The notes under the pieces: model-generated | What the model was told of the DNA's origin: nothing | Database searches by the model: none | Seen by the model: only the letters and a program-made list of their open reading frames with translations | Translations under genes and position numbers: made by a program | Part shown: in pieces, positions 20,760 through 64,000 of the stretch | How the letters are laid out: the number at the start of each line of letters is the position of its first letter | Numbering within the stretch: the stretch's first letter is position 1 | NCBI GenBank assembly: GCA_976226885.1 | Contig: OZ320315.1 | Span: 96,906,001-96,970,000, forward strand | Origin: Iphione sp. A-MEVVRFRX5 | Taxonomy: Eukaryota | Length of the DNA stretch: 64,000 bases | Direction of reading: 5' to 3'

Positions 20760-22930
20760 GTCCAGGTTCAGTGGTCCACAGAGGATGTATGTGTGGGTCA
20801 GAAACACAGGGCAGCTATACAGGGTATTTTATGAGGTTATTGATTCTGATATTCACTGTCTAGGTTATCAAGTCCATGTGATGATAATGTTCGCAGTCTC
20901 AATCCATTTGTTCTGGAGGTATTCCTGGTGATTTTCAAGCCATCCATCTTAGGTTATGTTGTATACATTCTCTGATGCTTATCTATAAGTTTTTAGAAAA
21001 TTCATGTCTACGAGTGTTAAAATGTTCTGCAATAAAATTTTTCTTTTCTGGTTTGTAATGTCATAACAGGTGGTGTCTAAAATGTTATCTATCATAGTCA
21101 ACGGTCTTAAAATGGTTTGGAAACTTTTGTAGCAACATTTTGAGTCTTCAAGATGTTTTCCTAATATGTTCCACTTCAGGTTGATATTGAGTCTATCGTG
21201 TTTGCCCACATCAGTCCAAGTCATTAGGTTGTTTTGTACAGCAAGGTGACGTCCATGGTGTTCAGACAATGTGGTTTGTGGAAGTCAACTGATCAGTGTA
21301 TGCAGAAACCTTGGTGGTGCATCTGTTAGCTGAGATGACTGGTCTTCCTGGTGGGGGAGACGATTCTTTATGTAACTTTGGTATTAGGTATAGCTCAGGT
21401 AAGAGGTATAGCTCAGGTAGTAGGCATAGCTCAGGTAAGCTCAGGTAATAGCTTAGGTATTAGGTGTAGCTATGATACTAGGTTTAGTTCAGGTAATAGG
21501 TATAGCTTAGGTATTAGGTGTAGCTCAGGTAAGTGCAGGTAATAGGTATAGCTTAGGCATTAGGTATAGCTCAGGTAAGTGCAGGTAATAGGTATAGCTT
21601 AGGTATTAGGTATAGCTCAGGTAAGCTGAGGTATTAGGTATAGGTAAGGTAAGTGTAGGTAATAGGTATAGCTTAGGTATTAGGTATAGCTCAGGTAATA
21701 TATATAGCTTAGGTATTAGGTATAGCCCAGGTAGCCTATAGTAGGCATAGCTTAGTGGTTAGGTAAAGCTCAGGTGTGGGTGGTATAATTCATTAGCTAA
21801 TCTTAGGGTCCTTTTTTTTTCCTGGTTTAATGTTTCTCTTTTGGGGTTGCCTCGAAGGGTATGATTTGTAATGTTCTTTTGTAGTTTTCCGCGTTCGATG
21901 TCACTCGTTTGTATGCCTTTTTGATGATTATGAAGAGCACTTTAAATCTTAATGTGTGAAATGATTGTTGATGACAGTAACTTTTATTCGCACACCTCAT
22001 TATTCTCTATCAATCCCGGGATTTTTGTAAGTGTCTGCATTCTATAGAGACTTGCAGTATGTCGACAATTGCAAGTTGCCTTCTTCAGCTGTGGTTTTTT
22101 ATGTTCTTTGTTCAGGACAACCTTGCTGTTCTCGTGTGGTTTTCATTTATGGCAGAGCCCAATCCACTAACATTAATGGTTCATTTTTTCATGATGAGGC
22201 TATGCATCGATTTATCCGTTCCTGTTCATTTTTTATTTCTCATCTTTCGATGAGTCCGGTTTGGGAGACACGTGTATAAATTCTAATACTGAAATGATTT
22301 TTTATATGCAGACAAGTTTTATTAAAGTGTACCGTGTACACATATTCTTGTCCTTTGTTTTGAAAATGCCATACAGATGATTTTTGAATCTTTCAACTTG
22401 ACTCAGTTTTAATCATAGTGTCCTTTATGGTGTCGGATCGTTATGAGTATGTCCCAGGTTTTCTGACAGTTCATTCAATATCCATGTTGCCTTCTTGGTA
22501 TTTAGTGATAAATATGATAGGTCTTCTTAGTTAGAAAGACTGGGTTCCTGCCTCTTGTTTGTGCTACTGAGTTGTGGTGCAGATGATTGAGGTGCTGTCT
22601 TGTGCTTGCAGTATTACTGCAAGGGCAGGGCGCTTCTCCCGCCTGGGCAGCGCCGACCACCGTACATATGTCTGAATTTGGAGGATTTTTGGAGGATCAT
22701 TCTTCAATTATTCATGCTTTCTTTATTCCTGGAGTAGTTAATACTCATGAAGATTATGCATCTTGTGTCTTCAAGAATAAATTGGAATGGAACTGTAAAA
22801 ATCTGTCATTCTAGTAATTTGTGGCATTCACAAAGTAGGTGGAATGCATTGTTTTTCTAAAAGCTGGGATCCTCACCATCCTACCCTTAGGCAGGCTTTG
22901 TACTGCATGAAGTGCTCTTCTTTGCTGTGT
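20760..22930 (-). mobile_element. Decayed Penelope-like element (RT region)
   Basis: Manual minus-strand translation gives IIIKKAYK (IIKxADKG block, about 21915-21940), PTPELYL..PKLHKESSPPPGRPVISAN (21301-21390) and LNTMDVTLLY (xDVxSLY motif, about 21235-21265). Many stops and frameshifts; no GIY-YIG endonuclease was recognised. Confidence 0.75.
21379..21775. repeat. Minisatellite inside the Penelope-like RT
   Basis: Variants of ggtattaggtatagctca, with a higher-order unit of about 48 bp. Confidence 0.95.
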
Positions 22931-23338
22931 TGTTGGCAAGCATCCTGGCACTCTTAGGTTATCAGGCTTAAGGTCCCCAGTGGCTGCCCCCCCCCCGAGC
23001 TATGTTTTACGTCGGGCTGTGGTAACGATGGCAGGCAATCCTCAGTGGCTGTGGTGTAACGATTGACAGGGGTCAGTGAGCCTTGCAAGGTGGTGGTGTA
23101 CAACCAGCAGTCACGGTACCAAGTCACTCAACCCCTCACCCCAAGGTTACAGTGGTTTGGGTGACCACCGGAGTCTGGCTGCACGAGGGGATGCTTCTCT
23201 GGGTTTCTCAGGCCCAGGTGAAGTCTGTGGTTAGGTATGTGCCACGTACGTGTCTTTGAGTAACTCTTGTAAGGTAGTTGATTTTCTTAGTTTCGAATGG
23301 TGAGATATTTATGCCCATTACGAGTAGCAAATTGCCTG

Positions 23339-24600
23339 CTAATCAATTCCTTTTGAAATAACCTCGTACCGCAAGTTGACTAACCGAAGTGACCTGTAAT
23401 ATATCTTGCCCTCCATGTTTATTCCTTCCTCAGTACACATTTTGGGCAGATATTTGTCCAGTGTATGGAGTCTACACAATTGGAGAGAAAATCTTTGTTG
23501 GGGTCGCCAGTAGAACTTGCCCTCTGAAGGAATATCCTCAAGGTATTTTTTTGAACATGGAAACAATACATTTGGGATTGTTTGGACTAGCATAATGTCA
23601 TATAAGCATAGATCTTGAGGTACATTCATTTGTCCCTGTAACTTCCTTAGACAGCCTTCCACGACAGACAAGATAGGGTATGACAATGACCCTATCTTAA
23701 GGGTATGATAATGAGTGCAAGAAAGACTATCTTATATTGATACCCTATCATATATTGGTTGACCTCAAGCTTGGAATCCAAACACTTTACAGTTGTAGAA
23801 ATATACACCATATGATAAAAGCCTTTTTCAGTAATGCCATTATCCCAGAGCTGATGCTCATCCTCCTCAGTTATCACATCTGCTCTTTCAGGGTGAGTCC
23901 CCATATCTGTAGCGATCAATTCCTTATGGCTAGCGTCTAGTGCATCCCTGAAGGTTTTAATATGGGGATCATCCTTTTTCAACAAACAGATGCTATGGTC
24001 AAGGTCAAGGTTCAGTGTTACAGTGTTGCAGACTGCGGGGCCTCGCCAGTCCAATTCTCAAGTTGTGAACAGCGCGTGACGAGTGCACATGGCACAGGTC
24101 ACTCACCCCCTCTTGCCAGGATTATAGTGGTCTGGAGGAAACCACCGGTGTGCTGTCACATGGGTGGGTGGGTCACTCAGTCTGTCGCAGACGAGGATGC
24201 CTGGCTTGATGGTATGTCATCCAAGATGGTCTCTCACATAGCGTTGAAGGCCGGCTGCTATGCTTGTCAGAGATCCTAAAAAAACTACATAATACACATT
24301 TCGGAGAATAAAATATTATTGGTGGGCCCCCCATCAAATATTTTCAATTATTTCTTATTTTACTTATCTGGTGGATATGCACTCCCATCCTTTGTCACCG
24401 CCAAAATAAAGTGTGACCACTAATAGTCTCAAGAGATCAGTGTCAGGAAAATCCAACGGGGTAATGGGCCAGTTTGAATGAATACCCTCTTGCCAATCGT
24501 GCCAAAGGCGCCAATATCTTAAATCTAATTTAAGTGGAAAGTGGAAGTACGGAATTGTAATTTCAACTTTCAACACGTTATTGCTATGATTACGTACCAC
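23339..24600 (-). mobile_element. Crypton-like DUF3504 YR gene, copy C1 (pseudogenised, SINE-interrupted)
   Basis: DGSAYPP | intron 24276-24367 | GSLTSIAAGLQRYVRDHLG, then LLKKDDPHIKTFRDALDASHKELIATDMGTHPERADVITEEDEHQLWDNG, then YLPKMCTEEGINMEGK. Confidence 0.85.
23998..24212 (-). mobile_element. 215-bp SINE-like insertion with 4-bp target-site duplication (TATG)
   Basis: Flanked by TATG at 23994-23997 and 24213-24216. The minus strand ends in GAACCTTGACCTTGAC (tandem tail). Removing it restores the frame LG*HSICLLKKDD, matching LGRSSVWLLKKDH of copy C2. Confidence 0.7.
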
Positions 24601-24989: not shown

Positions 24990-27900
24990 TCATATATCTC
25001 CAACACAACACGTCCTTGACGAAAATTTATAACATAACAATAAACATGACACAAAGAATAAAGGGCAGGCTTACTCTGACACTGGCCTTCAAGGTTACAT
25101 ATGAGAACTTCTGTGCCTAATGATGACCCCTAGGACTCTGGGGTTTCATTAAGGATAGACCAAACCAAAACAAAGCTTACCCTGCCAGATGTTAGAAGTG
25201 AGAGGTGGCTGCCTCCAATGCCAGGTTCTGGGAGGTGTACAGGAGGTAGGCGGGGGTGCATTTCCATGTACCCTGAACCATGATGTTGGGTTGCCCTAAG
25301 CCTGTAGTGTGGTAGAACCCCCTACAAAAAACTGAAGAGAATATTTATATGGCTGAAGGGAAAGGTTGGTATTAACTAACCTGAGCATGGAGACCATGCG
25401 GTAGGTAGTAATGGGGGAGAATAAATAAGGATCAACAAACAATGGCTGGGTAGGAGAGAATGTTGGTGCAACATTTAGCATACACTTGAAAGCATCTAGC
25501 GGGCATAAAGGTGAGCCCCTAACAGCAGGGACTGTTTCTGGTGAGGGTTTAGACCATTTAACCTATTATGAGTAATTTGTCCTGCTGACATACGACATCC
25601 TCCCTTGTCAGCTACGTGTCTGTATCAAATAAAGAAATAGACTTGGGAAGGTTGTTGTATTAGCGTAGCATGGAGTAAAACATAAATAAGAATGTTTTCA
25701 TAACTATGCCTAACGGACCCAGATGCTCAAGTAACTTGACTGTCAAGGTGAGGTGGTTGGGGTTGATAGGTTATTTGCGATCCACCACATGTTTGGAGGC
25801 TATTTCCAAGGCTTTTAATGCGTTAGCAATTTTTGGAACAGACAAGACTGAAATGTCCCCCATAAAGCCATAAAGAACTGTCTCATGGCTGTGACGTGTT
25901 GGGCAACAACTTTGGGGCTCCTGTACAGGACAGCAAAGTACTCGATGAATGGGGAGGTCATCAAGCTGGATGTTGGTCGTGTCGAGGTTGTAATGGATGG
26001 CGATTCCTAAGAACAGGGAGACCATCCTTATTTGAACGCCAGATCCTGATGGAGCACCGCCACCTTGGATTGAGGTAGTCTCAGGCTCATGGCTACAGTA
26101 TCAATTTCTAGACCTAGAAAAGTAACCACCTGGTTGGGGGCTTGCAGCTTGCCCCAACTGATAAAGGAACGTAGCATGATGGCCTCTAGTTGGGCCTGCT
26201 GGCATTTTAGGCGTGAGGGGGCTGTGATAAAAAAGTCATCGAGGTAGTTAACAACTTGATACCCTAATACGCAACACTACCAAGAAAAAACAAAACCCTG
26301 TAACTCCCTGTCTACCGGATGAACGTTGATGACCCTATAGGCTGACTTGATATCAATAGTACAAACGAAATAACCTGGATGTATAAGGTTAGTCACATCG
26401 TGTATAAGGTTAGTCACATCGTCTATCTTGGCAAGCCTGAATGAGTCAACTGTTCTGTCCATCGCATTGTTGATGGAAATGCCCTCAGGCCGGCTACAGT
26501 CGGTGATAGGGCGCACACCCCCGTCTTTCTTGCTAACTGCGCCCAAGGCGTGGACGTGAGTGGGCCTGTATTCTAGTACTTAGTTTCTCTTCCTCGATCT
26601 CCCCCTGGAGGTCGTCTGAGAGGAATTGATATAATCACCGCTGCAGTATGAGCGATAGTTGTCGACTTGGTATGGAGGTATGTCTCCGGATCGACGATGC
26701 GGAAACCGTAGCAAACACCGTCGATTAGATAGTGGAAGTCTGGATCGTCGTTGAGTGACAGCTCCCGCCACCACCCTGATGGAGAGTGTTGGGAGCGAAC
26801 TCCCCCCACCATGTGCTGGCTGCCCGCCCAGACTCGGTCAAGTGATGGGTTCCCCCAGACACCCTGGACACAGGGAGATGAGACGATCCCCTGAAAGCCC
26901 CCCCCCCCCCGAGTCGGACAACCAGAACGGTGGCCTACCTCTCATCGTAGCCGATTCTTGTCTTTCTGTGTCTTGCTGGGACAGTCGACTACCCGGTGAG
27001 CCTTGCGACAGGAAGAGCAAGCATGTAGGCGCCTGCAGTTGCTGAAGGTGCACTCCCGGCGGTTTTACTGCCAGCAGACGTCCTGTGGATACGAATCCCA
27101 CTCCCTTGCCGGTTGCTTGCGCTCCCTGGATGGCCGGTTGAAGGTCTCCCCTGTCAAATAATAAGCGACACTGTCGGTATCTGATACCACCCAGTCCTGC
27201 AGTTCTCCGGTTAGCACTTTCGTAGTAATGGCGTGCTCATAGCGGGCCAAGTTCTCAGCGGAGTGGATCTCCGGGCGGAATCGGCTGGCCATCCTCTTTT
27301 TTCCGTCCGAGGGTGCTTCGATGTCGACAGGGGCCGGGTCCTCAGTGAAGATGGATGCCCCGACGTTGTTGCTCAGCTCTGGAAAATTGAACTGTCTGGT
27401 GGCACTGTGCTGGGTTTGGGTTGGTGCTTCGTTGTTGCTTGATTGGATTGTTCTGCTCCGGTCGATAGTCTCAGCACCGCTGGCGTTGCCCCCCGCCTGA
27501 CCCCCGGTGTGACAGTTGGGAACTGCGGGAACTGTGGCGTCGGTTGCCCTGCCCGTTTGGAGCGATCGCCTTGCTGCCCTCAGCTCCTCGAGTTTCTTGC
27601 GCTGCTCTTCCGTCTCCTGTTCTGCCGCTAGTTCGGCCTCCTCTTTCGTGATTAGCTCCTGCAGGTAGGCGAGATACTCCGGGGACCCGTGCGACGGGGA
27701 TCGGTCTTGTCCGGAGGACAGCAGTGGGTCATGGGACGCCCCGTTCTGCTGGAGTCCGTGGCTTGAATTGAGAAGAGGCTGGCCGTTTTACCTGGCTGCT
27801 GCATCCTCTTCTCTGGTATTTGCCCCCTCAGACCCAGTCTGTGAAAAGAGGGACGACTTGTGTGGGGGGTGTTGGATGACGATGAGTGGAATGGTGCTAC

Positions 27901-28150: not shown

Positions 28151-28219
28151 TGTTTCTGGGTGGGTTGTGGGTTTTTGGGGAACCTGATCTACATTGTCAT
28201 TACCAAGAATATCCAAACC

Positions 28220-29722
28220 CAAACCAAACGTAGCATTACCTTCATTTTTTGTTGGACTAGACCATGCGGAGCCATTGGGAGGAGGAGGTTGATGAATATC
28301 ACTTTCTCCTCTATATTTGTTGATCTCTTATAATCCCGAATTGATAGGGATTTGTGGCCTGATTTCGTGGCAATGCAGCATGTTGCTTTCCTTGAATGGC
28401 CAGTAATACATGACGCCCTTCAAGATGTATGCCAGCCTCTGAGCACATTTGGGAATATATGAATATTTTTTAATAAGCTAACGATACACCTGGGATTGTC
28501 TGACCAAACAAGGAAGTGGAGCATTCTACCCCCTCAGCACTAATGCCCTGCATAGCCCTTTTTTATGATCTACCCCCAGAGGAGGATCTTTTGGCTCCCT
28601 TTTGCTGCCTAGGCTGCTCAGACATGCCATAATGGAAGAAGCCAAATCCATGATAACAACAAACCGTAATCTTTTTTCAGTGTCATAGGTTAAGGTGTAG
28701 TGAGGAACCTCCAAATTGGCATGCTCGTGTGTTGCCCTGAAGCCAACAATCTTACAATTATAGAAATATACACCGTAAGACAAGGCCCTTAGCTGTGGTG
28801 GAAATGTTCCACTATCCCACAATTGACGTTCATCTTCCTCAGTGATAATGTCAGCTCGCTTTGGGTGAGTCCCCATACCTGTCGCGATCAACTCCTTCCT
28901 ATGTGCCTCCAGGGCATCACGAAATGTCCTGAACTCAGGATGATCTTTCTTTAATAACCACACAGAGCTCCTTCCTAGATCATCTCCCATGTGTCTCTGT
29001 AAATTGGCAGCTATGCTGTTAAGTGAGCCTGCAAATCTTACCCCCACAATCCCTCCATCACTTCAATGTAATTCTATTTACCTGGAGGATAGGGACTGCC
29101 ATCTTTCTTCATAACCTTCATGATGAATTGGGCTAACCAATAGTCGAGAGTATCCAGGTCTGGTTGGAGTCCTCACGACTACCCTCCTGCCAATTTTTGC
29201 AGTGTCTCCATTCTCGAAAAACAGCCCATGAGGAGGCAGATCTCATTGATTTCGGAATCCTCCTTTAAATCCTATCTTGCAGTGTCACAAAACGATTCAG
29301 TCAATCAATTCGAAATGCAAGCCTCAGGTACATCTTCATTCACCATCGCAGTACACTCGGATGAACTTTGCCCTTGAGTATTGCAAACCGTTTCAGTAGG
29401 AGGCAACTCGACTGAATCGTTCTGTGACAGCAACTGACTGTTCTGAGATGATATGAATATTTTTCCATTTATTACATTCATTATACATAAGCCAACAAGC
29501 ATGTACATTAATATATGAACTCAATGCATACAAAATCGAACTGACAAATCACGGATGGTGAAGCCTACCTATACTCTTCGGGATATTTCCTTCCTTTGAC
29601 AATGAAATGTTTAAATTTTCGCTATTGGATTAGAAGATGATGTCCGTTCGACAATGGTGTCCTGGTTGAATTGTCAATCTGTCAGTCATTTCGTCCAGAG
29701 AATCGTGTCCTCCCTCCGCCAT
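28220..29722 (-). mobile_element. Crypton-like DUF3504 YR gene, copy C2
   Basis: LDYWLAQFIMKVMKKDGSPYPP | GT-AG intron 29029-29081 | GSLNSIAANLQRHM...WLLKKDHPEFRTFRDALEAH...VYFYNCKIVGFRATHEHANL, then KMCSEAGI.LEGR remnant. Candidate start MAEGG at 29722 (low confidence). Confidence 0.88.
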
Positions 29723-30949
29723 GGTTGCTCACCATGTCCTATCGGACCTCACAGTACTCCTGTCAAAACGAGAACATTTAGACCTGCACCTGCTGAACTA
29801 CAAGTAGGCCACTACTAATCTACTCAGATAATCCACTTCAGATAATTTGCAAACAATTCAGCCTCACATCCCAAGCCCATATCATGCAATTCCCTGATAA
29901 GGATACTGTGATTAACTGAATCGAACGCCTTTCGGCAGTCAATTTATTTAAATTTCTGAGATAAAGGCTGTCCCAGTACTAGCCTTCCCAGTACTATGGT
30001 TGAGCCTAAATCCATGTTGGTATCGAGATGGTTTTAATAGTTTAGTAGGTACATGTATCTTAATGTTTGTTTAAATACAACCTAATTTTGCAAATACATT
30101 CAAATTCCTTATCAGTCTATATTTTCCGACTTGCATCTTATTGCTCCTTTTTAAAAATAGGGGTAATGGCCTGCTTAAATGTTGGCCTCTCATCCAAGAT
30201 GGATCAGAGTGTACCCCAACCCTCAGATCAAGGTCAAACTCTACCGCATGTATCTGGTGTTTGATCTGTTTAATAAGAAGCCATTGTCATTACACCATTT
30301 TGAGACCTTATCCTTAGTCTACTGAGCTTTGCTGCACTAGAGCCCCACGACTAGATTGTCACATCATCGGCATTCATAATCCTGCACATGCCAAAACCAT
30401 TCCTGTACCTTTTTGGACTCCAAATTGTTGCATCATCATTAACAGGCAGTGTTCATTTTTGAGACTCTAGAGTGAACACATATTCCAAATTTTTTCCTGG
30501 CACAGGCACCAGACGTACTGGCCTGTAATTAAAACTTTGCTTAACACCCTTTCTTAAATAATGGCACAATTGTAGCCAGTTTCCAGGCCCTCGAGACGAT
30601 AGAATCCCTGAGGGACTGGTTCACGATTGATGTAAAGAGACAACTTGATCAGTAGCAGGTCTTTTTAGGCATGGCATGTTGAGAGATATTGAGATTAAGA
30701 AATATCTTTTCACGTTCTCTTAGGGCAGTGCCTGAGGTGTTTACAATGAAACAAGGTTTTAAGAAATGGACAATATAATACAAAATATAGTTTGACCTGT
30801 TATTAAATACATCTCCGAATATTGCCAAAATAACTATCATCCCACGAGGTGTCCAGCTTGGGATACAATTCGAGCAGCCAAGTCTTGCCTTTCCTTATGT
30901 CCCAGCTGTTAATTCACCTATCAATAACAACCTATGGATTAGACATATT

Positions 30950-32280
30950 GTTTCCAAGGAGTTAATTCCTGATTTTTTCTTTAGCGCCATGAATGATGTT
31001 CTCATGATATTAGATCTCCCCTGTCGTACTTTTTAAGGCATTGTTGAATTCAATTTGCAACTCAGTCTGACCTTTTTACTTGCATGGTTTAAAATTGAAT
31101 AGTTCCAACCTGTTTTCGTAAGGCAGTTGCCAGGAGACTCGAGCTAGTCCATAACTCCTTGATCTTACTTTTCGTCGCAAATATTGAACATGACTCCGCC
31201 AGTTTAGGCTACCATCAACTTGGTAGCCCTAAAAATATGACATTGTCACACTCTTCAATTTTTTCCCTCCTATTTCTAAATCAAGATTAAATTTTAATTT
31301 TGCATTTTTCCCAAACTCAACATATACGGTCCATCTTTCATTAATACACAACCCATTTGCCCTAATCTATGACTGTCTTTCAGACCCCTATTCAGCTTGA
31401 ACTGAAGAGCCATTACATTACTTGCAGCGGTGTAGAGAGTTATAGTATACATTTGGTTACCAAAAAGCAATCCGGTAGATCATTTATCATCAGAGGCAAA
31501 AGAAAGGGACCGAGTATACTACCCTGAGGAACCCCCTGTTTAACAGATAGTACAGTTGCAGATTTATCATTACAGTGAACATATTGTCTTCTGACTGATA
31601 GATATGAACTAGAGAGCGAAATCATCATCGATTTGCCAAAGGACATGAGCTAATTTAATAAAATTTTATGATTTATCACATCAAATGATTTAATAAAATT
31701 TTATGATTTATCACATCAAATGATTGACATATCTATCAACACCGCCGCAAAGTGGGAACCCCTATCTAATGCTTCATAAACATCCTTCAAAACACTGCAG
31801 CCGCTGTCTCAGTACTTTTACCCTCGGAAAGTCCTAGATCGTTTTCATCTATTTGACGTATTCTAGCTATTTTACATATTTTGGGGAAAACCTATTCTGA
31901 AATGCTAAATGTTAATAATGATACCTCTCTGAATAAACAAGCCCATCCTTTAACACCCTCATTGGTAGATTATGAATACCAGATTACAGGTTGCCATGTT
32001 CATACTAGTAATTCCGGATGGCTTACCCTTTTTTTGCTTTCTAACCAGTTGCTAATCACTTGCTCATCTACCGGTGCAACGCTCACCCTTTGTAGTGCTT
32101 TCAGACCATTTCCTATCACATTTAGATATCACATAGTTAATTGCTCCTTTACACAGTACATGTATATATATTAACACATACTCGATCCAGACACTGTTAT
32201 TACGTTCAATTGCAAAATTTGCCTTGTTTTCGAGATAATTCTTGTCAAGTACACATTCAATCAAAGCTAATAGTGAATGA
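30950..32280 (-). mobile_element. Decayed CR1/L2-like LINE RT fragment
   Basis: VFPKICKIARI, GKSTETA..AVLIDMS, QGVPQGSILGPFLLPLMINDLP; carries a 35-bp tandem duplication at 31653-31722. Confidence 0.85.
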
Positions 32281-34180: not shown

Positions 34181-34184
34181 GAGG

Positions 34185-36850: not shown

Positions 36851-37009
36851 CTACCATTCTAGTTAAATTTAAGAACAAACTGCATAAAAATGAACTAAAC
36901 GGCGAGTTGGGAAACTGGCATTTATTTATCACCCCACAATGTGTTGATTCATAAAATGCGAATAAAAACATGCAAGAGGCCAAAAGATGGGGTAAAATCA
37001 GGCTGACTG

Positions 37010-42010: not shown

Positions 42011-42019
42011 CATAAAGTT

Positions 42020-42904: not shown

Positions 42905-42934
42905 GTAGGATTACCTTCAGATTCTTCACCCATA

Positions 42935-43150: not shown

Positions 43151-43194
43151 AGCATAGGCATTTTGCAGTTGTGGTACTTGACACCACTGTGATT

Positions 43195-45014: not shown

Positions 45015-45053
45015 CTCAACCAGCTCTCCCGGTCAAAGTCTGATTTAGGTAGT

Positions 45054-46260: not shown

Positions 46261-46269
46261 TACAAGTAC

Positions 46270-46680: not shown

Positions 46681-46688
46681 GAGATTAA

Positions 46689-53299: not shown

Positions 53300-54880
53300 A
53301 CTAGAATTTTGCACTCAGTGAATGGCTCTCAGTGGCAATGCCACTGGAGGGGTCCCGACATGAATACTTATTTCACCTACCAGCGGCATGGCCACTTGGT
53401 ATTCACTCCGGTACCCAGTTATCATAGAGAAAACAAAAAGCAGCTATATTTCAACCCTGTCAACCAGGGGGACTCATAAACCTCAGCAGCATAACTACTG
53501 GAGAGCTTCACTACCCACACAACATCATCTTAGGGGATCTTAGATGACATTTTCTATGCTGCACCGTGTTTCTCAACGTACTTCCGAAATTTATTCATAT
53601 CCAGGTTGGTAACATACAATATATAGTCGTAGTTACACTGCTTATTACTACTTTACAACCCGGGCATAGCAGCATCTGTATCATATGTATCAGCAGTTGA
53701 CTATGACAGCCACATCATCAGCATACATTACAGTATGTGCATCCAGATATCTTGGGAGTGAGTTAATGAAAACCAAAAACATCAATGGCCCATGGATCGA
53801 GCCCTGTAGGACACCGCATTGGACCAGCTTAGCCTTAGATTGGCTTTTATTACACACAACATATTGCTTTGTTATTCAGGTATTTCTGGAACCAAGCTAA
53901 GATTTGAGTCGAAATATTGCACTCTTTTAATCTCTCTAATAAGACATGATTCACCGAGTCAAAGGCTTTCCTGAAATCTACGAATATACCAGTCATCCTT
54001 CGCCCTTTATTTAGATTGACATATGTATAGTTTAAGAGATCAGTTATAGCTGACTCGGTGGATCTGCCAGGTAGAAAACCATACTGCTGGCTAGCCAGCC
54101 ATGAGTGAAAGAGCAAGTAGCTCAACATGGCCCTATGCACCAGCTTTTCTTGAAACTTCCCTATTACACTCGGAAAACTAATTCGTCTGTAGTTAGTTAC
54201 AGCACTCATATTTCCCCCTTTTATCTAATGGGAAAACCTGTGCGGTCTTCCAGTCAGTAGGAATAAATCCCCCATCAAAGCTCTCATTGAACATTTTACT
54301 GAAGAATTTAATATTCTGTTTTACCGCCTCCTTGATTATCAACATCGGTACACTTCCTACTCTCGATGCTTTGGAATTCTTACATGTCATTAAAAGATTT
54401 CCTCAGGACTGCAAAAGGCCTTATTGATTCTTGGCACCTTCTACTAGCTATCTTACCCTTCCAAGATTTCTAGATTTTATTGAAACAGTGTTATCACCTG
54501 CTTGCAATGCTTATTCGAACATGCTTCTAGAACTACTTAAGAACTAATCCTGTGGATTTATATGCTTGGTTCCTTGTTTTAATGCAGGTAGAGCCAATTC
54601 CCCCATGACACTTCGAAAACTGTTCCATTAATTGTCCTCCCTGGTACTTGACGTCTTGTAATGTTCATGATTAGGCTTGGACAGCACTATTGTTGTGGCT
54701 GAGCCAGCTCTCATAATTCTCCTCACAGAGCTGCAATGTGATCATGTTCTTAAACAACATTGGAGAAAAATAGTCACATCTCTGAAAATAGTCCATCCTT
54801 CTGTTCTTAAACATCCAGTCCTTTGCTTGGGCGGTTGTTGCGCCACCTTCTAGGATACACACGTAGAAGTTTACCACGTA
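53300..54880 (-). mobile_element. Decayed LINE RT fragment
   Basis: IPTDWKTAQVFPLDK, NYRRISF, QYGFLPGRSTESA, FVDFRKAFDSVNH, GVLQGSIHGP. Confidence 0.85.
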
Positions 54881-54899: not shown

Positions 54900-55700
54900 T
54901 AGACTTGGGGACCCCTACATCAAAAATGATACCATGATCCAAATGTGACAGGAAGTATGCATTGAAGGCCAAAATTTGTGCCTCTTTAGTGAGATATGGT
55001 CTGGCACATCTCAGCAAGGAGAGAGAGAGCTGTTTAACCTTCTAAGCTTCTTCTCAATCATCTGTTTGAAAGACATTCGATCATCCAACTCATAACCAAG
55101 AAAGTTAAGTCCTGACCTTGGTTATTGCTGTGTCATTTATCCGAAGATCAAGATTAAAACCCAGAGCCTGACCTAGGGTCATGTTTCTTGTCTTTCTTTC
55201 ATTTAACAGGAAGCCATTGGTACTACACCAACTGGCAATCCTGTCCGGTGTGTACTGTACCTTTCTTGATGGGGCTGCAAGTATAGACCATCACATTTGC
55301 ATACAGTGTCAGTCTACTTGGAAATTCTACATCAGTGATGTCATTCAGGACCATTAAGAAGAGCTAGGGCCCAGGAATCGAGTCCTGGCGAACCCCAGTA
55401 GTCGTTGATTTGAAACAACTAATACTTCTATATATCCATGTCCGCAGTCAAGCAAAGAATGGGATAATTTCATTCACACTTGAATTTACATGCATATTCT
55501 AAAACTGTGGTTGGTTATTGTGTTAATTGAATGCTTGGGAATCATGCTTTAAGTGAGATACAAAAGCTCTTGTATGGTTGTATGCGAATAATGGTGCTGG
55601 CAATAGAGGATACATCTTATGAGTATTTGTAGCCAGGCTGTGCACTTCTTCAACATTAAGTCTGTGGAATTGTTTTGACTAATTTTCGCTAGTGTATTAC
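54900..55700 (-). mobile_element. Second decayed LINE RT fragment
   Basis: TGVRQDSIPGP*LFLMVLNDI..LTLYANV (GVPQGS/YADD remnants) and RPYLTKEAQILAFNAYFLSHLDHG (thumb region). Confidence 0.7.
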
Positions 55701-56079
55701 ATGTTTGCATAGCTGTACCTTCTTAACCGAAGGGCATATATATTATCACTTAAGGATCCTGCCCGTTTATAGTAGTTGTTGCTCTGAATGTACATCTGTC
55801 TGTAACACCCCAACCTTATTTGACTCACTGGCAGTTTCCCCTTCCTTTATGTTTGAAGAGATTCTTTTATCAACACTAGCATTCTTCGCCAGAGCGATTT
55901 CATTTGTTTTTCACTGTACTGACTTTCCCAAACCGATATGGCCAGGGTCCTCGGGTTCTGGAATCTGTAAGGTCCTGATCTGCGTACTGCTTCTTTTGTT
56001 GGATGTAATCTGGTCCTCGCGTCCCCCCTTACTCCTTATTCGAGTCCATTATTCATTTCTTTTCTAATCATATGCCTAC

Positions 56080-56700
56080 TAGGAGGTCCACTTGGGTAAT
56101 AAAAAATTTTCTAAATACTTTTGTGCAACGTTATTAATTTCGCAATTTTCCTTTAGTATTTACCAAACAAAATTCCCATAGTCGATTATAGGCAGTAACA
56201 TTGTTCTCACCAAACAAAAGAGCGCTGTAGAGTCATCTCCTTTCTAATCAACTTGAAAAATCTTAATTTGTTATAGCCCTTGTGTAATTGTTCTCTTAGA
56301 AAGCTATTCCAGTTCAAGTCTGATTAACTCAAAACGCCCAGGTATTTAAAGGTAGAGACCCATTCTAGTTCCCGACCTGCTAGGTACAGGGGAAATCGAT
56401 ATGTTATGTAAATGGCTTGTTTTTTTAAAATTTACCAGATTTTGACCAGTCACACAATTTGTCAAAGTTTTATTGCATTTTTCCCGTAGTTGAACAATAT
56501 TGTCATCAGCCACTATTAACGCAACATGATCGTTTTACGGCCTCTGGTAAATTATTTATAAAGATCAGGAACAGTAGGGGGCCAATAATTGACCCCTTGG
56601 GGACTCCGCATTCAATTTTTACCGTTTTGCTCTTTCAAGATTCAAGATTGTTTTATTGCCTTCTCCATATATGGCGATACAGAGTGATCATTGGAAAATA
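56080..56700 (-). mobile_element. Third decayed LINE RT fragment
   Basis: CGVPKGSIIGP/LFLIFINNLP, ADD, ELEWVSTFKYLGV..SDLNW. Confidence 0.8.
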
Positions 56701-57310
56701 TAACAGAACAAACATCTAGTGCATTGTAGAGAAAGAAAATAAAGTGAAGACGGCATGCGTTATATGGCAGTGGATGTGTGCTAACACTATTACAGTATTA
56801 CAATTTATATTACAAAATGACAATACCACCAGTTCCTTCTATGAAATTAGTTCATAGGTTCCATTAAACAGTAATGCCACTCCCAGGTAGTGTATCCCAC
56901 CGCACTCCCTGCCCCGCACACCAAAAGGATTGCTGCATTTAAGTTAATGCCCACACAGTTCATTATTCCAGGTTAATGTATGTCTTATGCTAGCATCAGT
57001 CAAAAGTATCACAGGTGTACTACAAAAATCATTATCACAGTTGGCTTCCTTGGATATAATCATCTCTTGGTTTACAACTAATGTTGCAACAAGACATAGG
57101 GGGTGATACTCCCTACAGTTGACTGTTTAGAGCATGACGTCACTAACTAGACCTGTCACTGACCATGCTAGTGTAGTGTTAGTGTAGGAAAAGTTGGGGT
57201 GAACCATGCCCCAAGCAGCCCACAGTGGCACTGTTCTTATGTCATACCCAGACTCGTAGTCATGTCCTCCTCTTGGCTGTATCTAGCTGCTACACTATAC
57301 CATGGTCTTA

Positions 57311-59962
57311 TCATGCAAGGTCAACCCTTACTTTGGGCATTGCCCTCAGCATTGGAACTTTCAGACTCCTCTTTACTTCCAAGGACAGGTCATTCCAGCG
57401 CAAGGCGCCATGGTATCCCAGTGATTTTCTGAACAGTACGGTTTTTGGTCTGGACAGTCTTACCCTCACCTCTCCCCCCTTCTTGTTTTTGTCCCAGCAT
57501 CCATTGACCATGTATTGACTGTAGTCCCCTCTCAGCAACTAAGCTTTCCACCCATGGAATATCGAGCTTGCTCTGAAGCCTGCATGCAGAAAGGAATTTG
57601 CCACATTGTATCGATGCCCTCGCACATCTGTTTAGATGTACCTGTAACTGGATCATCTCAGATGTGCCCAGTGTGTATAGGGCAGGGAGATTATGCTGCA
57701 GGTGAGGGAGTACAAGTGACGTAAAGAGCTGCACTCTCTTAGCCAGTGGGAAAAACCTCTTCACCCTGGACAGTTTCCTTGATGCCATCCACATCCTTTG
57801 GATCACCAGCTTGATTGTGTCCCTACAGCCTAACTTGTCCTCAATGTAGTACCAGAGGATTTTGATGGACCTTACATCGACCAGCGGACATTTGTTTAGA
57901 GTCAGATCCAATGGGACGCCTGCAGCTTTCCCTAGCATAGCATACATATATTTTTTCTCACTCCACACAAACTGGTTCTCAGAACACCAGGTCCAGACTG
58001 CCTCTATGACCCTCATAGCCTTCCCCCGTAGCTGCAGCAAGTCTCTCCCCCACACTATGACTGTCAGATCGTCAGCATAGATGACTGGCAAGGCTGTAGT
58101 GCATAGACAGCTGATAATCCCATTCATAACACATATAAAGGCACTTGGCCCGAATACTGATCCCTGTGGAACTCCTCTTGACAACTGCATGATGTCTGAG
58201 CATTCTCCCCCCCACATTTCACAAACTGACCTCTCTGGCTTAGATAGCTTTTCGCTAGTGCGCAAGTGCGCAGATCTAGGCCGAATTTTGCCAGACTCTA
58301 CTATGCTACTATAAAGCACCAGGTTGAAGGCTTTCTTGAGGTCAAATGTTATGAGACAGCAACATAGCCCCTGATTGATAAGTTCGTGTGCTTCACATAG
58401 CAGCTTCACGAATGCAGTCTCTGTCCCATGGCCCTCTCTAAAGCAATGTTGTGCCTCACTTAATTTACCCTCCTTTTCCAGATACTCCATGACTGCCTAT
58501 GTAAACCATTTCTCACATATTTTGCTGGGGAGTGGGAGGATCGAGACAGGCCTATAGTTTCCTAATTCGTCCTTATTTCCCTTCTTATTGACCGGAGTTA
58601 CCCTAGCTATTTTCCAAGCTTCAGGGAAACATCCTGTCTTGAGGATCTTCGAAAAGATCCAGGCCAGGAAATCAGCCATTCTCAGCATTAACGGTTTTAA
58701 TACCACAGTTGGGACAACCTCGAAACCCAGATTGTTTCCTTGACCTTGCTAATCAGCTCAGCAACATGCTGTGGTGAGGGCGGCATTATCTCATGCCTTC
58801 CCACTATTCCCTTTGTGTCCTGAGTCACCAGACTTGATCTACTAGCCAACCTGTCTACCTCCCAGACAAAAAAGTTATTGAATGCATCTGGTCGGCCTAG
58901 CCCTGTTTCTGCCTCTATTATCTCCTTTTTGGGTAGGATTTCCCGATCATTCCCCCTTCTCAATAGGGCATTCACTATTTCCCAATGTTTGGCCTGATCA
59001 TTACTGGCTGACTTCACCCTCCCACTCCAGAACAAGCGCTTCTCCTCGTTGATGGCTTTTTCAAATTTCTTATCAAGAAATTTGAAAATGTTTTTACTGT
59101 CCTCACAGCTGCTGTTCTTCCACTTTTTGAAGTAGTATGTGCGATCCCTCCCGAAGCCCAGCTGAGATTCTGAAACCATCCTCCTTAACCTTAACTTTGC
59201 GCATCCTTAGTGGACACATATCTTCTATGCTCGACCTCACTGTCCCAATGAAGGCTGACCAGGCTTCATGATTCCCAGTCATGTCCATCCCCCCACCCTG
59301 CTCCACCCTGCGTAGTACTTCCTCAACATCCGCATCTCCCGAATTCCGACATTGGTACTCTTTTTTCACTAGCTTGGGTGCCCCCTTTTTAATTACTAGA
59401 GACACTGGCAGATGATCACTTATAAACAGTCATGTGAATCCCCCACAGAGCATCCCCTAGCATTTACCTATATTTGGTCCAAGATGTGGTCATTGTTCTT
59501 CATAGTTCACAGACCATCTGCGTCATCCCTTTACCTACCAACAAATTCCTCTGGGGGCCTGTAGACACACAGAATATCTAGTGGCCTTCGTTGGCCATAC
59601 TTAAGGGAGACACCCAAGAACTCACAAGCACTGCCCTCCTCCTTTATCTTTACGCGGCCTAATTCCCTGTACTCCTCCATGTGATGTAAGACAAGTCCAC
59701 CACCCCGCTTTTTGTTTTCCACCAATCTGTCAGCTCTGATTGATGTGTACCCATGGACAGCTAACTCGCGGTCAGCAAATGACTCATTTAACCACGTCTC
59801 CGTAATGCACATAATGTTGATGTTGCATCCACACATTTCCCCCACCCTGTCCACCTTTCTACCCAGACTTCTGACGTTCCATGTCCCCACCCGGAGTCCC
59901 GGCATAATGGTGAGAATTTCATCCACTATCGCACAGTGCAGCCCCTGACTTCCCACTATCAC
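57311..59962 (-). mobile_element. CR1/L2-like LINE ORF2 (APE-RT), frameshifted; same family as 48640-51330
   Basis: VGTWNVRSL, CITETWL, RADR..KKRGGGL, YRPVSILPLPSK, FDLKKAF, GVPQGSVFGP, IYADD. Confidence 0.95.
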
Positions 59963-60768
59963 CCTTGGTACCCTTCAAGCTATAATAGACTGCTAGGATA
60001 CGTAAACTACTTAACCCCGCTGCTTATAGGTGTGCAATTAGTGTGGCCAAAACTGATCGATAAGTTGGATGATCAGGTTGATCTATAATTCACTAAATAA
60101 GTCAGATAAATTGTCTAATATGTGTAGTTTAATGGAAAATTGGATAAATCGTTACATAAAAAATTGATCAATCATCATTTGGGTGAACATTCAGCTAAAT
60201 TTGCTTAGTATGTACCAGGATAAATAGTTACATAAATAGTTGGATAAATAGTTCGATAGATAATTGGTGCATAGCTGGGTGCTCTCCGGAAAAAGTTTAA
60301 CGTTTGGGATGGTAATAGTGACTTAACCCCCTCTCTCCCAATCCCGAGTTTTTTTGGTTTTTTTTATTCATGTATTTTACCTGGCGTTTATTGGCGTCAG
60401 GATATAACTACATCAGATACATTTCCTGCGGTTTTGTACTATATACAACAACTATAGACAATACTTACAATAGATATACACTATGTACAGTTATATACAT
60501 ATGTACAAGTCATGGATGATGATGGTGAGTAGCTAGAAACATCAGTGTAGTCAGTTATTGAACTAATAACTTATTTCGTAGTGAATGTGGTCATACTTCT
60601 AATGTACCCATAAGTTCTCCTTCGAGATCTTGTTCAACAGGTGTTTTTTTATCTCATTTTTAAATTGTGGCTTAGGAATAACCTTTATTGGATTGGATAG
60701 TTTATTCCATTCAGATTTTGTTTGGTATAGAGGACATTTGGTATATAAAACAGTATTTGGACATTTGG

Positions 60769-63404
60769 TTAATAAGTGTTTCGAAGCCTGTTTTCTACTA
60801 TCAGATCATTGTATTCGTGGTATAATGAAGTGTGATGTATTGTTAGGGAGTAGTACCTACTCCTCATTTTGAATGGGAGAATATTGTTTGCTTTTAGGAA
60901 CAATTCTATGTTACAATTTTCATTCCGAGTAATGATTTTGATAGCCTTAGTAAGCTGATTTTCTAGTCGTTTAAATAATGGTCGCTCAAAGCATTTTATA
61001 GCGCTAATACCGTATTCCAGATTAGGGATAAAATACGATTTCAGAACAATAAGGCTTGTTGAATTATCCCCTAATTTAGCAACATGTCTTAGTAGATTGA
61101 GAAGACTATATGATTTTTTTAGTTTTCGTTCTAATTCATATGTCATGCTTAGCGTACTGTCTAGCATAAAGCCTAGGTATTTGTACCTGTCTACCTGAGA
61201 TAATTTAGAGTTGCCTATGCATACTTTCAGTTTTCCATCTTTGTATTTACTTCGTGGAGTTGTGAAGAGCATGGATTCTGTTTTGGTGTAGTTGATTCTG
61301 ATTCCATTCTTTTTACACCATGCATCTAAAGTACTCAGGTTACTATTCAGACCTTTCTCTATACTCTTTAAATTGGTATCACTGTATAAAATCACCGTGT
61401 CGTTGGCATACATAACAGAAAAAGTCTTTTAATTGAGATAGGCAGTCATCTATGAATAGGCAGTCATCTATGAAAAGAGTGAACAGCATAGGGCCAATTA
61501 TACTCCCTTGGGGTACTCCAATATTCAATGGGCACTTCTGCAGAATTGGTGCGTTTAAATTTCGTGATTATGTTTCTATTTGCAAGATAATTCTCAACCC
61601 AGGCTACGGTGGGACCTAGGCCCATTTTTTCCAATTTCTTTATTAGTACTGTGTGTTGGAGGGAGTCGAAGGCCTTTTTGTAGTCTACAAATATTGCTCC
61701 AACAATGTTGCCATTATCAAGTTCATTGTAGATGTAGTTCAAGACTTTGTCTAGTGCATGAATTGTAGAGCGCCCTTTGCGGAAACCAAATTGCTGATCA
61801 GAAAGTAGATTGTTAGTTTCAATATATTCCATTGTTTGTTCAAATATAATTTTCTCTAGTATTTTACTAGGTAGTGGTAATATGCTAATCGGGCGGTAGG
61901 AGTTTGGGTCGGATTTGTGTCCCTTGCCTTTGTATAGAGGGGTAACGGTGGCTGTCTTCCATGCATTTGGGATAATGTTACTGTTAATGGAACAATTTAT
62001 CAAATGCATAAATTGTTCTAATACTGTGGTAATGGCATTTAGGAATATTTTGGAGGAGCAATAATGTAGACCGCTTGGCTTTGACTTCAGTAGCTTTAGC
62101 ACATACTGTTCACTTACCCTCCTAAGGTGTAGTTCAGTTTTGGCTTGTTTGACTCCTATCGTGGTCAGGGGGTTGTTGATTTCAAATGTGGAATTGCCAA
62201 TAGTAGCAAAATGTCCGTTCAGCTTTGCGACAACTTCATGAGCATCTAATTGTCTACCATTCTCTCTCATGATAACGATATTATTACTTTTATTTTTACC
62301 TAATATTCCAGATAGTAGGCCCCAGTATTTTTTTGGGTTTTGCCTATGATGTAATAGTTGATTACGGTAGTATATCAATTTCTCATTATGTAGTTTAACC
62401 GATATCTTAGATTTTAATGCTACTGCTCTGTCGTACATGCATTTATTTTTTAGTCTGATTCCAAGTTTGAAAAGTTGATTTTTTTCTGAAATTAATTTTC
62501 TTGTTTCATCTGATAACCATGTATTGGTTCCTGTGAATGAGTTGGTATGTTTCATTGGTGAGATTTTGTTAATACAGCACTCTAATATGTTTGATAAGTA
62601 GGTCCAGAGGTAGTCGGGGTCTCTTTCGGTGTAGTATCGAGACCAGTCAGACTGAATTAGCATGTCATGTAGCATGTTGTCATTAATATCTTTCCATGGA
62701 CGGTATATATGGTAAGTAAATTCTGATTTCTTTTTTATTACTCTAGTGATAACTTTGATTCCGTGATGGTCACTCAAAAATGTTTTTAGGACTGAGGATG
62801 ACGATTGTAGGGTTTTACTGATGAAGACTAGGTCTAGACAACTGCTGGTTGACATGCTGACTCGGGTGGGTTTTGTGATTACTTGAGTTAAGTTGTTGTT
62901 GAGACCAATGTGCTTTAGCTCGTTATATATAGCATTATTTTTCTTAAGAGCATCAATGTTGAAGTCCCCCAGTAATAGTACGTTGCTGTGGGTGGTATTA
63001 TTAATTTTGGATAATTGCGAGTCTAGGATGTCAAGGAACTCTCTTACTGATCCTCTTGGCGGGCGATATAATACTCCTACTATGTACTCATGTTTTGTTT
63101 CAGTGGTGATTTTGATCCAGAATATTTCTATATTTCGATTGCTATTGACTAGTTCAGTTTGCATGTCTGCACCTATATTATTACGTAAGAACATAAGGAT
63201 ACCACCTCCAGCACTGTACGTCCTGTCTAGTCTCGTGATGTTGTAGCCGTTTATGCTATTTAGCCATGATTCACTGATGGCTATAACGTCTGGGGTATGC
63301 TTATTCACTAAGATCTCCAACTCTGGCATCTTATTTTTTATACTTCTCATATTGAAATAGAGAACCGTCAGGTGGTCATACTGTTCAATTTTGGCGTTAC
63401 TCAT
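60769..63404 (-). pseudogene. LINE ORF2 (APE + RT), broken only around GVPQG/YADD
   Basis: FNMRSI, IAISESWL, LLGDFN, FLSDH, YRPISILP, FVDYKKAFD; frameshifts at about 61515 and 61420-61440; YADD reads YAND. Confidence 0.93.
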
Positions 63405-63811
63405 ATGTTAGAGATGAAAAGTAATATGAAATGTTGTTTTGATATATGGCTTATGGTCGATAGTATTTGACGTAGTATATTTATGTTGGGCCGGGGGAGT
63501 TGAAAGTCTTGAATAGTTGTCCAGGTCTCATCAACGAGGCCAGTGGATGCTAACATATATGATTTTATTGTTATTATTAACAAGCATATGCGGTAGGTTG
63601 ATACATGTCATGCCATAATAAAAAGACATGAAGTATTAGATAATACAGGGTGACATTCATAAGGCAATATACATTTGAAAGCAAGTAAATGAAGGGTTTA
63701 TACATGGCGAAAAAAGACAGTAATTGTAAAATGGACTGAATTCAAACACAGTGATACAAATGACACATATGAACACTCATGAGGCGAGGCCGTCGGTTAC
63801 AGTTCATGTAA

Positions 63812-64000
63812 TTATTCATGGAGTTTGTGCAGGAATTTTACCAGTTTGGTGACCATTTCTTGGCGTCCTTGATAATTCAGGTGACAGCCATCTTCAAGCA
63901 ACTGGTGTCGGTTGGTGTCCCGGCCATTAGATCGTCCGTGTATCACGCTACCGATATGTCGAGTTATCAGTCCGTGTGACCTGTTGAAGGCGCGGATACC
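63812..64000 (-). CDS. C-terminus of an SGNH-esterase-like ORF (not in the ORF track; begins beyond the window)
   Basis: Open frame from base 64000: GIRAFNRSHGLITRHIGSVIHGRSNGRDTNRHQLLEDGCHLNYQGRQEMVTKLVKFLHKLHE*, with an intact DGxH block V. Confidence 0.7.
   Translation of the reverse strand, partial: GIRAFNRSHGLITRHIGSVIHGRSNGRDTNRHQLLEDGCHLNYQGRQEMVTKLVKFLHKLHE

What the first reader, a model, noticed from the sequence alone, without database searches (positions are those of the whole stretch)
20760..64000. Extreme strand bias: 23 of 24 transposon segments on the minus strand, resembling a uni-strand piRNA cluster
Seen: the Penelope-like element, 7 Crypton-like copies, 4 Ngaro-like elements, the YR insert, the DIRS1 gag, 2 MULE fragments, the SINE and 6 LINE segments are all minus-oriented; only the NADAR-LINE is plus. 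Unrelated classes (DNA transposons, YR retroelements, LINEs) share the bias, so one insertion mechanism cannot explain it. Established: flamenco-type uni-strand piRNA clusters accumulate TE fragments antisense to a single precursor. Inference: a plus-strand precursor is selected here. Caveat: some fragments may derive from the same insertion and are not independent.
Basis: partly seen in the sequence, partly recalled or inferred. Interest (0 to 1): 0.75.

Follow-up and report, generated by a model that had tools for sequence, protein, structure and literature searches.

The report
Left edge of one-strand transposon array
From about 21 kb onward nearly every readable jumping-gene remnant in this window points the same way, and this is the left edge of an array at least 0.7 Mb long that looks like a locus making transposon-silencing piRNAs, but no RNA data could be obtained to show that it does.

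Summary
Between 20.9 and 64 kb I can assign a coding sense to 18-21 transposon pieces: 7 Crypton (DUF3504) copies, 3 tyrosine-recombinase retroelements, 6-7 LINE pieces, one Penelope-like and one MULE-like piece. All but one lie on the minus strand. The exception is the NADAR-LINE at 45.05-51.8 kb.

The Crypton copies I could test are old, independent insertions, not recent local duplicates.

The 200 kb to the left is different. It has few transposons, in mixed orientation (two Gypsy plus, one Gypsy and one Polinton minus), and about 65 kb next to the array has no recognisable transposon coding at all.

To the right, 8 of 8 chance matches inside C4:97.06-97.64 Mb are co-oriented with the window's copies. 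Earlier notes of this scan report the same one-strand layout in eight further windows, up to 0.68 Mb beyond this window's end. So this window holds the left border of an array of at least 0.72 Mb.

The layout meets the sequence criteria used to discover flamenco-like unistrand piRNA clusters in Drosophila. A long non-piRNA transcript, a giant intron, or an orientation-specific insertion process remain possible.

The scan has reported this array before on neighbouring DNA. New here are the border and the mixed left flank.

The parts
1..20900 (.). Border zone left of the array. No transposon coding is recognisable. Only short high-copy repeats occur (6373-6786, 11182-11543, 20013-20491). If the array is read on the plus strand, its start should lie here, most plausibly between 16 and 21 kb (inferred).
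   Evidence: only two repeat blocks match elsewhere in the genome; no Pfam domain in 11 ORFs; polyadenylation hexamers are 25 plus to 7 minus at 8-16 kb and fall to 2 plus to 4 minus at 16-20 kb; no clear CpG island.
20982..21459 (-). Penelope-like reverse-transcriptase fragment (motif only), next to an 18/46/92-nt tandem repeat at 21372-21733.
   Evidence: ORF text; tandem repeat. No Pfam hit.
23296..24057 (-). Crypton copy 1
   Evidence: tblastn against DUF3504-confirmed copies, E 1e-23.
25260..27787 (-). Tyrosine-recombinase retroelement 1: recombinase at 25260-25562, RT at 26031-26579, coiled-coil gag-like ORF at 27068-27787.
   Evidence: RVT_1 E 7e-4. The recombinase is similar to the one at 37.0-37.4 kb.
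28204..29160 (-). Crypton copy 2, with a 146-bp high-copy insert at 28519-28664.
   Evidence: DUF3504 E 1e-4. Nearest genomic relatives 68-73% identical.
29839..29943 (-). LINE RT fragment
   Evidence: tblastn.
31443..31700 (-). LINE RT fragment; not in the same order along the strand as the fragment at 29.8 kb, so a separate element.
   Evidence: RVT_1 E 3e-3; tblastn E 2e-12.
32701..33560 (-). Crypton copy 3
   Evidence: It is 86% identical to a copy on C11 but 68-73% to its neighbours, so it is an independent insertion.
33787..34200 (-). Crypton copy 4, in tandem with copy 3.
   Evidence: DUF3504 E 2e-8.
34269..36207 (-). Tyrosine-recombinase retroelement 2 (RT/RNase H part).
   Evidence: RVT_1 E 2e-4. 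Same order along the strand as element 3.
36373..40457 (-). Tyrosine-recombinase retroelement 3, nearly complete. Order on the minus strand: gag-like 39852-40457, RT 38016-39632, recombinase 37013-38006.
   Evidence: Phage_integrase E 4e-5. Nearest relatives 66-72% identical.
40787..42084 (-). Unclassified run of minus-strand ORFs; not counted in the tally.
   Evidence: no family hit.
42305..42910 (-). MULE-like transposase fragment (motifs only).
   Evidence: ORF text. No Pfam hit.
43068..43306 (-). Crypton copy 5
   Evidence: tblastn.
43794..45015 (-). Crypton copy 6
   Evidence: DUF3504 E 2e-5. Relatives 66-70% identical on many chromosomes, 20 plus to 24 minus.
45050..51800 (+). The only plus-strand element: the NADAR-LINE. 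It is also the youngest large insert, 85-88% identical to a copy on C1.
   Evidence: RVT_1 E 1e-31.
52183..52917 (-). Crypton copy 7
   Evidence: Closer to copies on C19 and C13 (75-79%) than to the local copy 6 (69-73%).
53670..54402 (-). LINE RT fragment
   Evidence: RVT_1 E 3e-11.
55108..56716 (-). One or two further LINE RT fragments: 55108-55245, and an antisense trace of an RT motif at about 56.6 kb.
57393..59974 (-). LINE ORF2 (endonuclease plus RT).
   Evidence: RVT_1 E 3e-13, Exo_endo_phos E 3e-3.
60602..64000 (-). LINE with a 646-aa open endonuclease-RT frame; it runs off the window.
   Evidence: RVT_1 E 6e-17, Exo_endo_phos_2 E 3e-10.

Best explanation
The window holds the left border of a co-oriented transposon array at least 0.72 Mb long, about C4:96.927-97.65 Mb. 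The most likely reading is a unistrand piRNA source locus of the flamenco type, still active or active in the past.

In that reading a long plus-strand transcript starts just left of the first minus-strand element, most plausibly between 16 and 21 kb, and runs rightwards. Transposons land in either orientation. Those lying antisense to the transcript yield antisense piRNAs and are kept. Sense insertions bring terminators and no useful guides, and are lost.

Shown here: the bias, the border, the independence and age of the Crypton copies I could test, and co-orientation far to the right. Inferred: the transcript, its direction, its start, and piRNA production.
For: 1. 14-19 oriented coding pieces on minus against 1 on plus, from at least four unrelated classes. 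There are no domains on the plus strand elsewhere in the array.
2. The Crypton copies I could test are not local duplicates. Neighbouring Cryptons are 68-73% identical to each other, while copy 3 is 86% identical to a copy on C11 and copy 7 is closer to copies on C19 and C13.
3. The same families elsewhere in the genome lie in both orientations, for example 20 plus to 24 minus.
4. The left 200 kb is sparse and mixed: Gypsy minus, Gypsy with env plus, Polinton minus, Gypsy plus. About 65 kb next to the array has almost no transposon coding.
5. All 8 matches that fell inside C4:97.06-97.64 Mb are co-oriented with the window's copies, and 5 of 5 with known sense are minus; p = 0.008.
6. Earlier notes report the same layout in eight windows further right, the first overlapping this window's last 2 kb and the last ending 0.68 Mb beyond it.
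7. Flamenco-like clusters of 227-1085 kb were discovered by exactly this signature and confirmed by small RNA (PMC10643416).
8. The single sense element is the youngest large insert, as expected if sense insertions are purged with time.
Against: No RNA evidence of any kind.

The content is old. Nearest genomic relatives are 65-88% identical, so few perfect 26-30 nt matches to any active copy are expected. The Gypsy families that are intact in the left flank are absent from the window's part of the array.

About half of the pieces are tyrosine-recombinase elements, which might integrate with a fixed orientation next to resident copies.

The plus strand still carries 28 polyadenylation hexamers in 36.5 kb, about what base composition predicts. 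No promoter-like feature was found at the border.

In the one annelid profiled for small RNA, Capitella teleta, no piRNA locus exceeded 10 kb (PMC8915122).
Confidence: 0.5

Rival explanations
1. The array lies inside a long plus-strand transcription unit that is not a piRNA precursor, either a giant intron of a protein-coding gene or a long non-coding RNA. Ordinary selection against sense-oriented insertions (premature termination, cryptic splicing) produced the bias.
For: An antisense bias of LINEs and LTR elements in introns is well documented in mammals (PMC3088655; PMC3517506 and PMC1794541, abstracts). The single sense element is the youngest.
Against: As far as I know, intronic biases in mammals are modest (my own knowledge, not a number I read here), whereas here 93-95% of pieces are co-oriented. 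No exon-like ORF with a Pfam domain was found at the border or in the array. Earlier notes describe the windows to the right as holding only transposon debris (unchecked). An intron or intron series of at least 0.7 Mb would be extreme for a 1.18-Gb genome.
Confidence: 0.2
2. The bias is mechanistic or historical, not selected. One version is orientation-specific integration: tyrosine-recombinase elements recombining next to resident copies, or target-primed and single-strand-targeting elements following one replication-fork direction. The other is very old direct segmental duplications inside the array.
For: Seven Cryptons and three or four tyrosine-recombinase retroelements make up about half of the pieces. 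Two Crypton pairs are in tandem. Matches to the window's rare old families fall inside the 0.7-Mb array far more often than its 0.06% share of the genome predicts: 8 hits among a few hundred matches listed.
Against: LINE, Penelope-like and MULE-like pieces share the orientation. Crypton copies 3 and 7 are closer to copies on other chromosomes than to their neighbours. No duplicated junctions or blocks appear in the self-comparison. The left flank and the rest of the genome show no such bias.
Confidence: 0.2
3. Chance clustering of orientations, inflated by counting fragments of the same insertion.
For: For the window alone p is 1e-3 to 4e-5. About 27,000 stretches of this size exist in the genome, so a few such windows are expected by chance.
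Against: The bias continues for at least 0.7 Mb (8 of 8 spot matches in my, plus eight earlier notes). Fragments that cover the same part of the protein cannot belong to one insertion.
Confidence: 0.03

Closest known systems
flamenco and flamenco-like unistrand piRNA clusters of Drosophila (PMC10643416)
   Same: Size of hundreds of kb. Transposon-dense. Nearly all insertions on one strand. A sharp border to ordinary DNA at one end. Discoverable from strand bias alone.
   Different: Flamenco is enriched in young Gypsy-type endogenous retroviruses, and only these carry the bias. Here the content is old Crypton, tyrosine-recombinase retroelement and LINE debris, with no Gypsy in the window. The lineage is annelid-like, not an insect. 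No small-RNA, promoter or PIWI evidence.
Antisense bias of transposons in introns of long genes (mammals; PMC3088655, PMC3517506, PMC1794541)
   Same: Selection by a transcript against sense-oriented insertions would give the same sign of bias, and a young sense outlier.
   Different: The purity of the bias here is far higher and the span far longer. No exons were seen.
piRNA loci of the annelid Capitella teleta (PMC8915122)
   Same: In Capitella piRNAs with phasing and ping-pong signatures exist and some loci are uni-strand; this genome is annelid-like only according to earlier notes of the scan.
   Different: The largest Capitella locus reported is 10 kb and no massive cluster was found. This array is about 70 times longer.

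Membership tests
Unistrand (flamenco-type) piRNA cluster | Large transposon-rich locus (tens to hundreds of kb) outside ordinary gene-dense DNA. | tested here: met
   At least 18 coding transposon pieces in 43 kb, against 4-7 elements in the 200 kb to the left. Extension to at least 0.72 Mb comes from 8 spot matches and earlier notes.
Unistrand (flamenco-type) piRNA cluster | Strong strand bias of transposon insertions across unrelated families. | tested here: met
   14-19 minus to 1 plus.
Unistrand (flamenco-type) piRNA cluster | 24-32 nt, 1U-biased, phased small RNAs mapping uniquely and almost only to one strand. | not testable with these tools
Unistrand (flamenco-type) piRNA cluster | One promoter at the 5' end driving a long precursor antisense to the transposons. 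| tested here: inconclusive
   The border is located at about 20.9 kb. No CpG island or other promoter-like feature was found. Plus-strand polyadenylation hexamers are dense at 8-16 kb and sparse at 16-22 kb, which only weakly suggests a start right of 16 kb.
Unistrand (flamenco-type) piRNA cluster | Content matches currently or recently active transposons (trap function). | tested here: not met
   In this window the nearest relatives of the large elements are 65-88% identical. Only short repeats are young (a 295-bp repeat, 96%). The Gypsy families intact in the flank are absent. This covers 6% of the array only.
Crypton DNA transposons | A tyrosine recombinase that matches DUF3504, which DIRS/Ngaro recombinases do not (PMC3212892). 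| tested here: met
   DUF3504 hits at three copies. The other four copies are joined to them by tblastn. The retroelement recombinase at 37.0 kb hits Phage_integrase instead.
DIRS/Ngaro-type tyrosine-recombinase retroelements | Gag-like ORF, RT/RNase H and tyrosine recombinase on one strand in that order. | tested here: met
   Element at 36.4-40.5 kb: gag-like ORF, then ORFs that match the RVT_1-confirmed RT of element 2, then a Phage_integrase ORF, all on the minus strand. Its own ORFs gave no RVT_1 hit. Terminal repeat structure and the Ngaro versus DIRS subtype were not examined.
Intron of a host gene | Flanking or interspersed spliced exons on the plus strand. | tested here: inconclusive
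   No domain-bearing plus-strand ORFs at the border or in the array. The right-hand 0.66 Mb could not be read. No transcript data.

The most novel reading that the evidence does not exclude
The co-orientation is not a product of selection by a transcript. It is a record of orientation-specific insertion. Tyrosine-recombinase elements that act on single-stranded DNA, and target-primed retroelements (LINE, Penelope-like), would all have entered a 0.7-Mb domain that is replicated (or transcribed) in one direction in the germline. The array would then map a fork-direction domain rather than a piRNA cluster.
Probability: 0.07. Interest if true: 0.85.

Novelty: new member of a known kind. Interest (0 to 1): 0.55.

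Why it matters
Large unistrand piRNA clusters are well established in flies. I found none described for annelids, and the one annelid profiled in detail, Capitella, showed no locus above 10 kb.

A 0.7-Mb flamenco-like array in an annelid-like genome would show that this architecture arises far outside insects, and with a different cargo: Crypton, tyrosine-recombinase retroelements and LINEs instead of Gypsy retroviruses.

This window matters within the array because it holds the border. Under the model the precursor starts there, so the search for a promoter narrows to a few kb that can be tested with 5'-end RNA mapping and deletion.

If no piRNAs come from the array, then a near-perfect orientation filter over 0.7 Mb needs another explanation, which would be more surprising.

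Tried and rejected
I did not fetch the right flank by any other route. I used only the coordinates and strands of matches from the genome search.
3. Genome-wide background. The RVT_1 family search scores only 150 of 38,547 candidates, so no background distribution of one-strand domains could be built.
4. Recent tandem or segmental duplication as the source of the co-oriented Cryptons. Rejected: self-identity is 68-73% and limited to coding parts, and copies on other chromosomes are closer.
5. CpG observed/expected as a mark of a different germline state. There is no step at the border (0.56 against 0.55).
6. Depletion of polyadenylation signals on the plus strand. The asymmetry of 28 to 55 is mostly explained by base composition (expected 25.5 to 41.8), so it adds nothing independent.
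7. Rfam and tRNA scans, to orient non-coding repeats or find Penelope ribozymes: no hits.
8. Pfam on ORFs of the border zone, to find a host gene or promoter-side gene: nothing.
9. The masked N runs at 2316-2485 and 6181-6370 were left as they are.
Full report
**Where the window lies.** The window is G000:C4:96906001-96970000 in a 1.18-Gb assembly of 89 contigs. Earlier notes of the scan call the genome annelid-like. Two masked N runs (2316-2485 and 6181-6370) were left untouched.

**Checking the observation.** I translated all open frames and scanned them against Pfam, then used the confirmed pieces as queries against the window.
- Minus-strand ORFs carry DUF3504, the Crypton-type recombinase domain, at 28.5, 33.8 and 44.0 kb.
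- Minus-strand ORFs carry RVT_1 at 26.3, 31.4, 34.9, 53.9, 57.4-58.5 and 60.8-63.4 kb.
- Phage_integrase is at 37.0 kb, and LINE endonuclease domains are at 59.5 and 62.8-63.4 kb.
- A tblastn of every ORF of at least 80 aa against the region adds four more Crypton copies (23.3-24.06, 32.7-33.56, 43.07-43.31, 52.18-52.92 kb) and small LINE fragments at 29.84 and 55.1 kb, all minus.
- It also links the three tyrosine-recombinase retroelements (25.3-27.8, 34.3-36.2, 36.4-40.5 kb), whose ORFs match one another in the same order along the strand.
- The only plus-strand element is the LINE at 45.05-51.8 kb (RVT_1 E 1e-31).
- As a fairness control, the ten longest plus-strand ORFs elsewhere in the array have no Pfam domain.
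- The Penelope-like piece (about 21.3 kb) and the MULE-like piece (42.3-42.9 kb) rest on motifs I recognise in the ORF text, not on a model hit.
- DUF3504 separates Cryptons from DIRS/Ngaro recombinases according to Kojima and Jurka (PMC3212892), so the two kinds of tyrosine-recombinase element here really are different classes.

**Are the pieces independent?**
- Fragments that cover the same part of the protein cannot be pieces of one insertion. This gives 7 Cryptons, or 5 if the two tandem pairs are merged.
- For the LINEs it gives 6-7 pieces from at least 5 elements.
- Neighbouring Cryptons are only 68-73% identical in DNA, and only within coding parts.
- Copy 3 is 86% identical to a copy on C11. 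Copy 7 is closer to copies on C19 and C13 than to the local copy 6.
- So for the copies I could test, local duplication is not the source.
- Counts of 14:1 (conservative) to 19:1 (liberal) give two-sided p = 1e-3 to 4e-5.
- With about 27,000 stretches of this size in the genome, the window alone could still be a chance find.

**Context to the left.** I fetched C4:96706001-96906000.
- It holds a Gypsy element on minus (-189 to -181 kb), a Gypsy with an envelope-like ORF on plus (-173.6 to -166 kb), a Polinton on minus (-146 to -129.5 kb) and a Gypsy on plus (-95 to -90.5 kb).
- There are a few further unclassified long ORFs on both strands.
- From about -45 kb to +20.9 kb almost no transposon coding is recognisable.
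- The left flank is therefore sparse, young and mixed. The array to the right is dense, old and one-stranded. The change falls at about 20.9 kb.

- Searching the genome with pieces of the window returned mostly distant relatives scattered over all chromosomes in both orientations, for example 20 plus to 24 minus for Crypton copy 6.
- Eight matches fell inside C4:97.06-97.64 Mb, and all eight are co-oriented with the window's copies.
- Five have known sense, and all five are minus-sense. They are relatives of retroelement 3 (97060700), of the last LINE (97109853) and of retroelement 2 (97155064), plus two relatives of the plus-strand LINE that lie inverted relative to it (97441236, 97513140).
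- Three are of unknown sense (97446531, 97507574, 97639783).
- For 8 of 8, p = 0.008.
- Eight earlier notes of this scan describe the same one-strand layout, in windows from one that overlaps this window's last 2 kb to one that begins 618 kb past its end. The follow-up agents had no RNA data either. I treat those notes as leads. My spot matches agree with them.
- Together they place an array of at least 0.72 Mb at about C4:96.927-97.65 Mb, with its left border in this window.

**Age.**
- The large elements have nearest genomic relatives at 65-75% identity. Crypton copy 3 reaches 86%.
- The plus-strand LINE reaches 85-88%, so the single sense-oriented element is the youngest large insert.
- Only short high-copy repeats are young (295 bp at 32289-32583, up to 96%).
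- None of the Gypsy families that are intact in the flank occurs in the window's part of the array.

**Interpretation.** Strand bias across unrelated classes over hundreds of kb, next to mixed DNA, is the signature by which flamenco-like unistrand clusters (227-1085 kb) were discovered in Drosophila genomes and then confirmed with small RNA (PMC10643416).
- The most economical mechanism is a long plus-strand transcript that starts at the left border and filters insertions by orientation. Whether its products are piRNAs is inferred.
- The purity of the bias speaks for a piRNA precursor rather than an ordinary gene. As far as I know, intronic biases in mammals are modest (my knowledge; the sign of the bias is documented in PMC3088655).
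- The lack of any exon-like ORF points the same way.
- Against it: there are no RNA data, the debris is old, and young active families are absent from this 6% of the array.
- About half of the pieces are tyrosine-recombinase elements that might integrate directionally.
- The plus strand has a normal load of polyadenylation hexamers once base composition is allowed for, and the border shows no promoter-like feature.
- In Capitella teleta no piRNA locus exceeded 10 kb (PMC8915122).
- I put 0.5 on a unistrand piRNA source locus, present or past. I put 0.2 on another long transcription unit, 0.2 on a mechanistic or duplicative origin, and 0.03 on chance.

I did not try to obtain the same material by other routes.

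**Novelty and score.** The array has already been reported by this scan on neighbouring DNA. What this report adds is the left border, the mixed and sparse left flank, the independence and age of the Crypton copies tested, and an independent spot check of the extension. It is a new member of a known kind (candidate unistrand piRNA cluster) in a lineage where none of this size is described. It remains unproven.

Noticed in passing
L007:5784-9998 (-), running on into L008:1-532; that is C4:96771784-96776532: A Polinton/Maverick-type element (about -146 to -129.5 kb from the window start; an rve integrase with chromodomain lies nearby). Its 1583-aa polymerase-B ORF ends in a NADAR domain (E 9e-9). 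The LINE in the window and other LINEs of this genome are also noted to carry NADAR, so unrelated mobile elements here seem to have captured the same domain.
   Followed up: no
L003:6378 to L004:3949 (+); that is C4:96732378-96739949: A Gypsy-type element with long open gag and pol frames, followed by a 731-aa ORF that matches the baculovirus F envelope protein (E 1e-6). This is an errantivirus-like layout in an annelid-like genome. Observed only.
   Followed up: no
L015:7035-9611 (-): An 859-aa frame without a stop codon and with no Pfam domain, about 50 kb left of the window. It is either an unclassified transposase or a host gene.
   Followed up: no
window 60602-64000: The last LINE keeps a 646-aa open endonuclease-RT frame, yet its nearest genomic relatives are only 65-68% identical in DNA. 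It is either a very low-copy lineage that inserted recently, or closer copies were not scored by the search.
   Followed up: partly
window 32289-32583, 20013-20491, 11182-11543, 28519-28664: Four short high-copy repeats (295, 480, 360 and 146 bp) with many copies at 83-96% identity over all chromosomes. They are the only young repeats in the window. Their sense could not be read: no tRNA head and no Rfam match.
   Followed up: partly
window 8001-16000: Polyadenylation hexamers are 25 on plus against 7 on minus, and the AT skew is positive from about -16 kb to +8 kb. This could mark a minus-strand transcription unit that ends or starts beside the array border. No exon was found.
   Followed up: partly
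window 21372-21733 and 6373-6786: A tandem repeat with nested 18/46/92-nt periods directly beside the Penelope-like fragment. A GAG-rich 152-nt tandem repeat abuts a masked N run and has relatives on several chromosomes.
   Followed up: no
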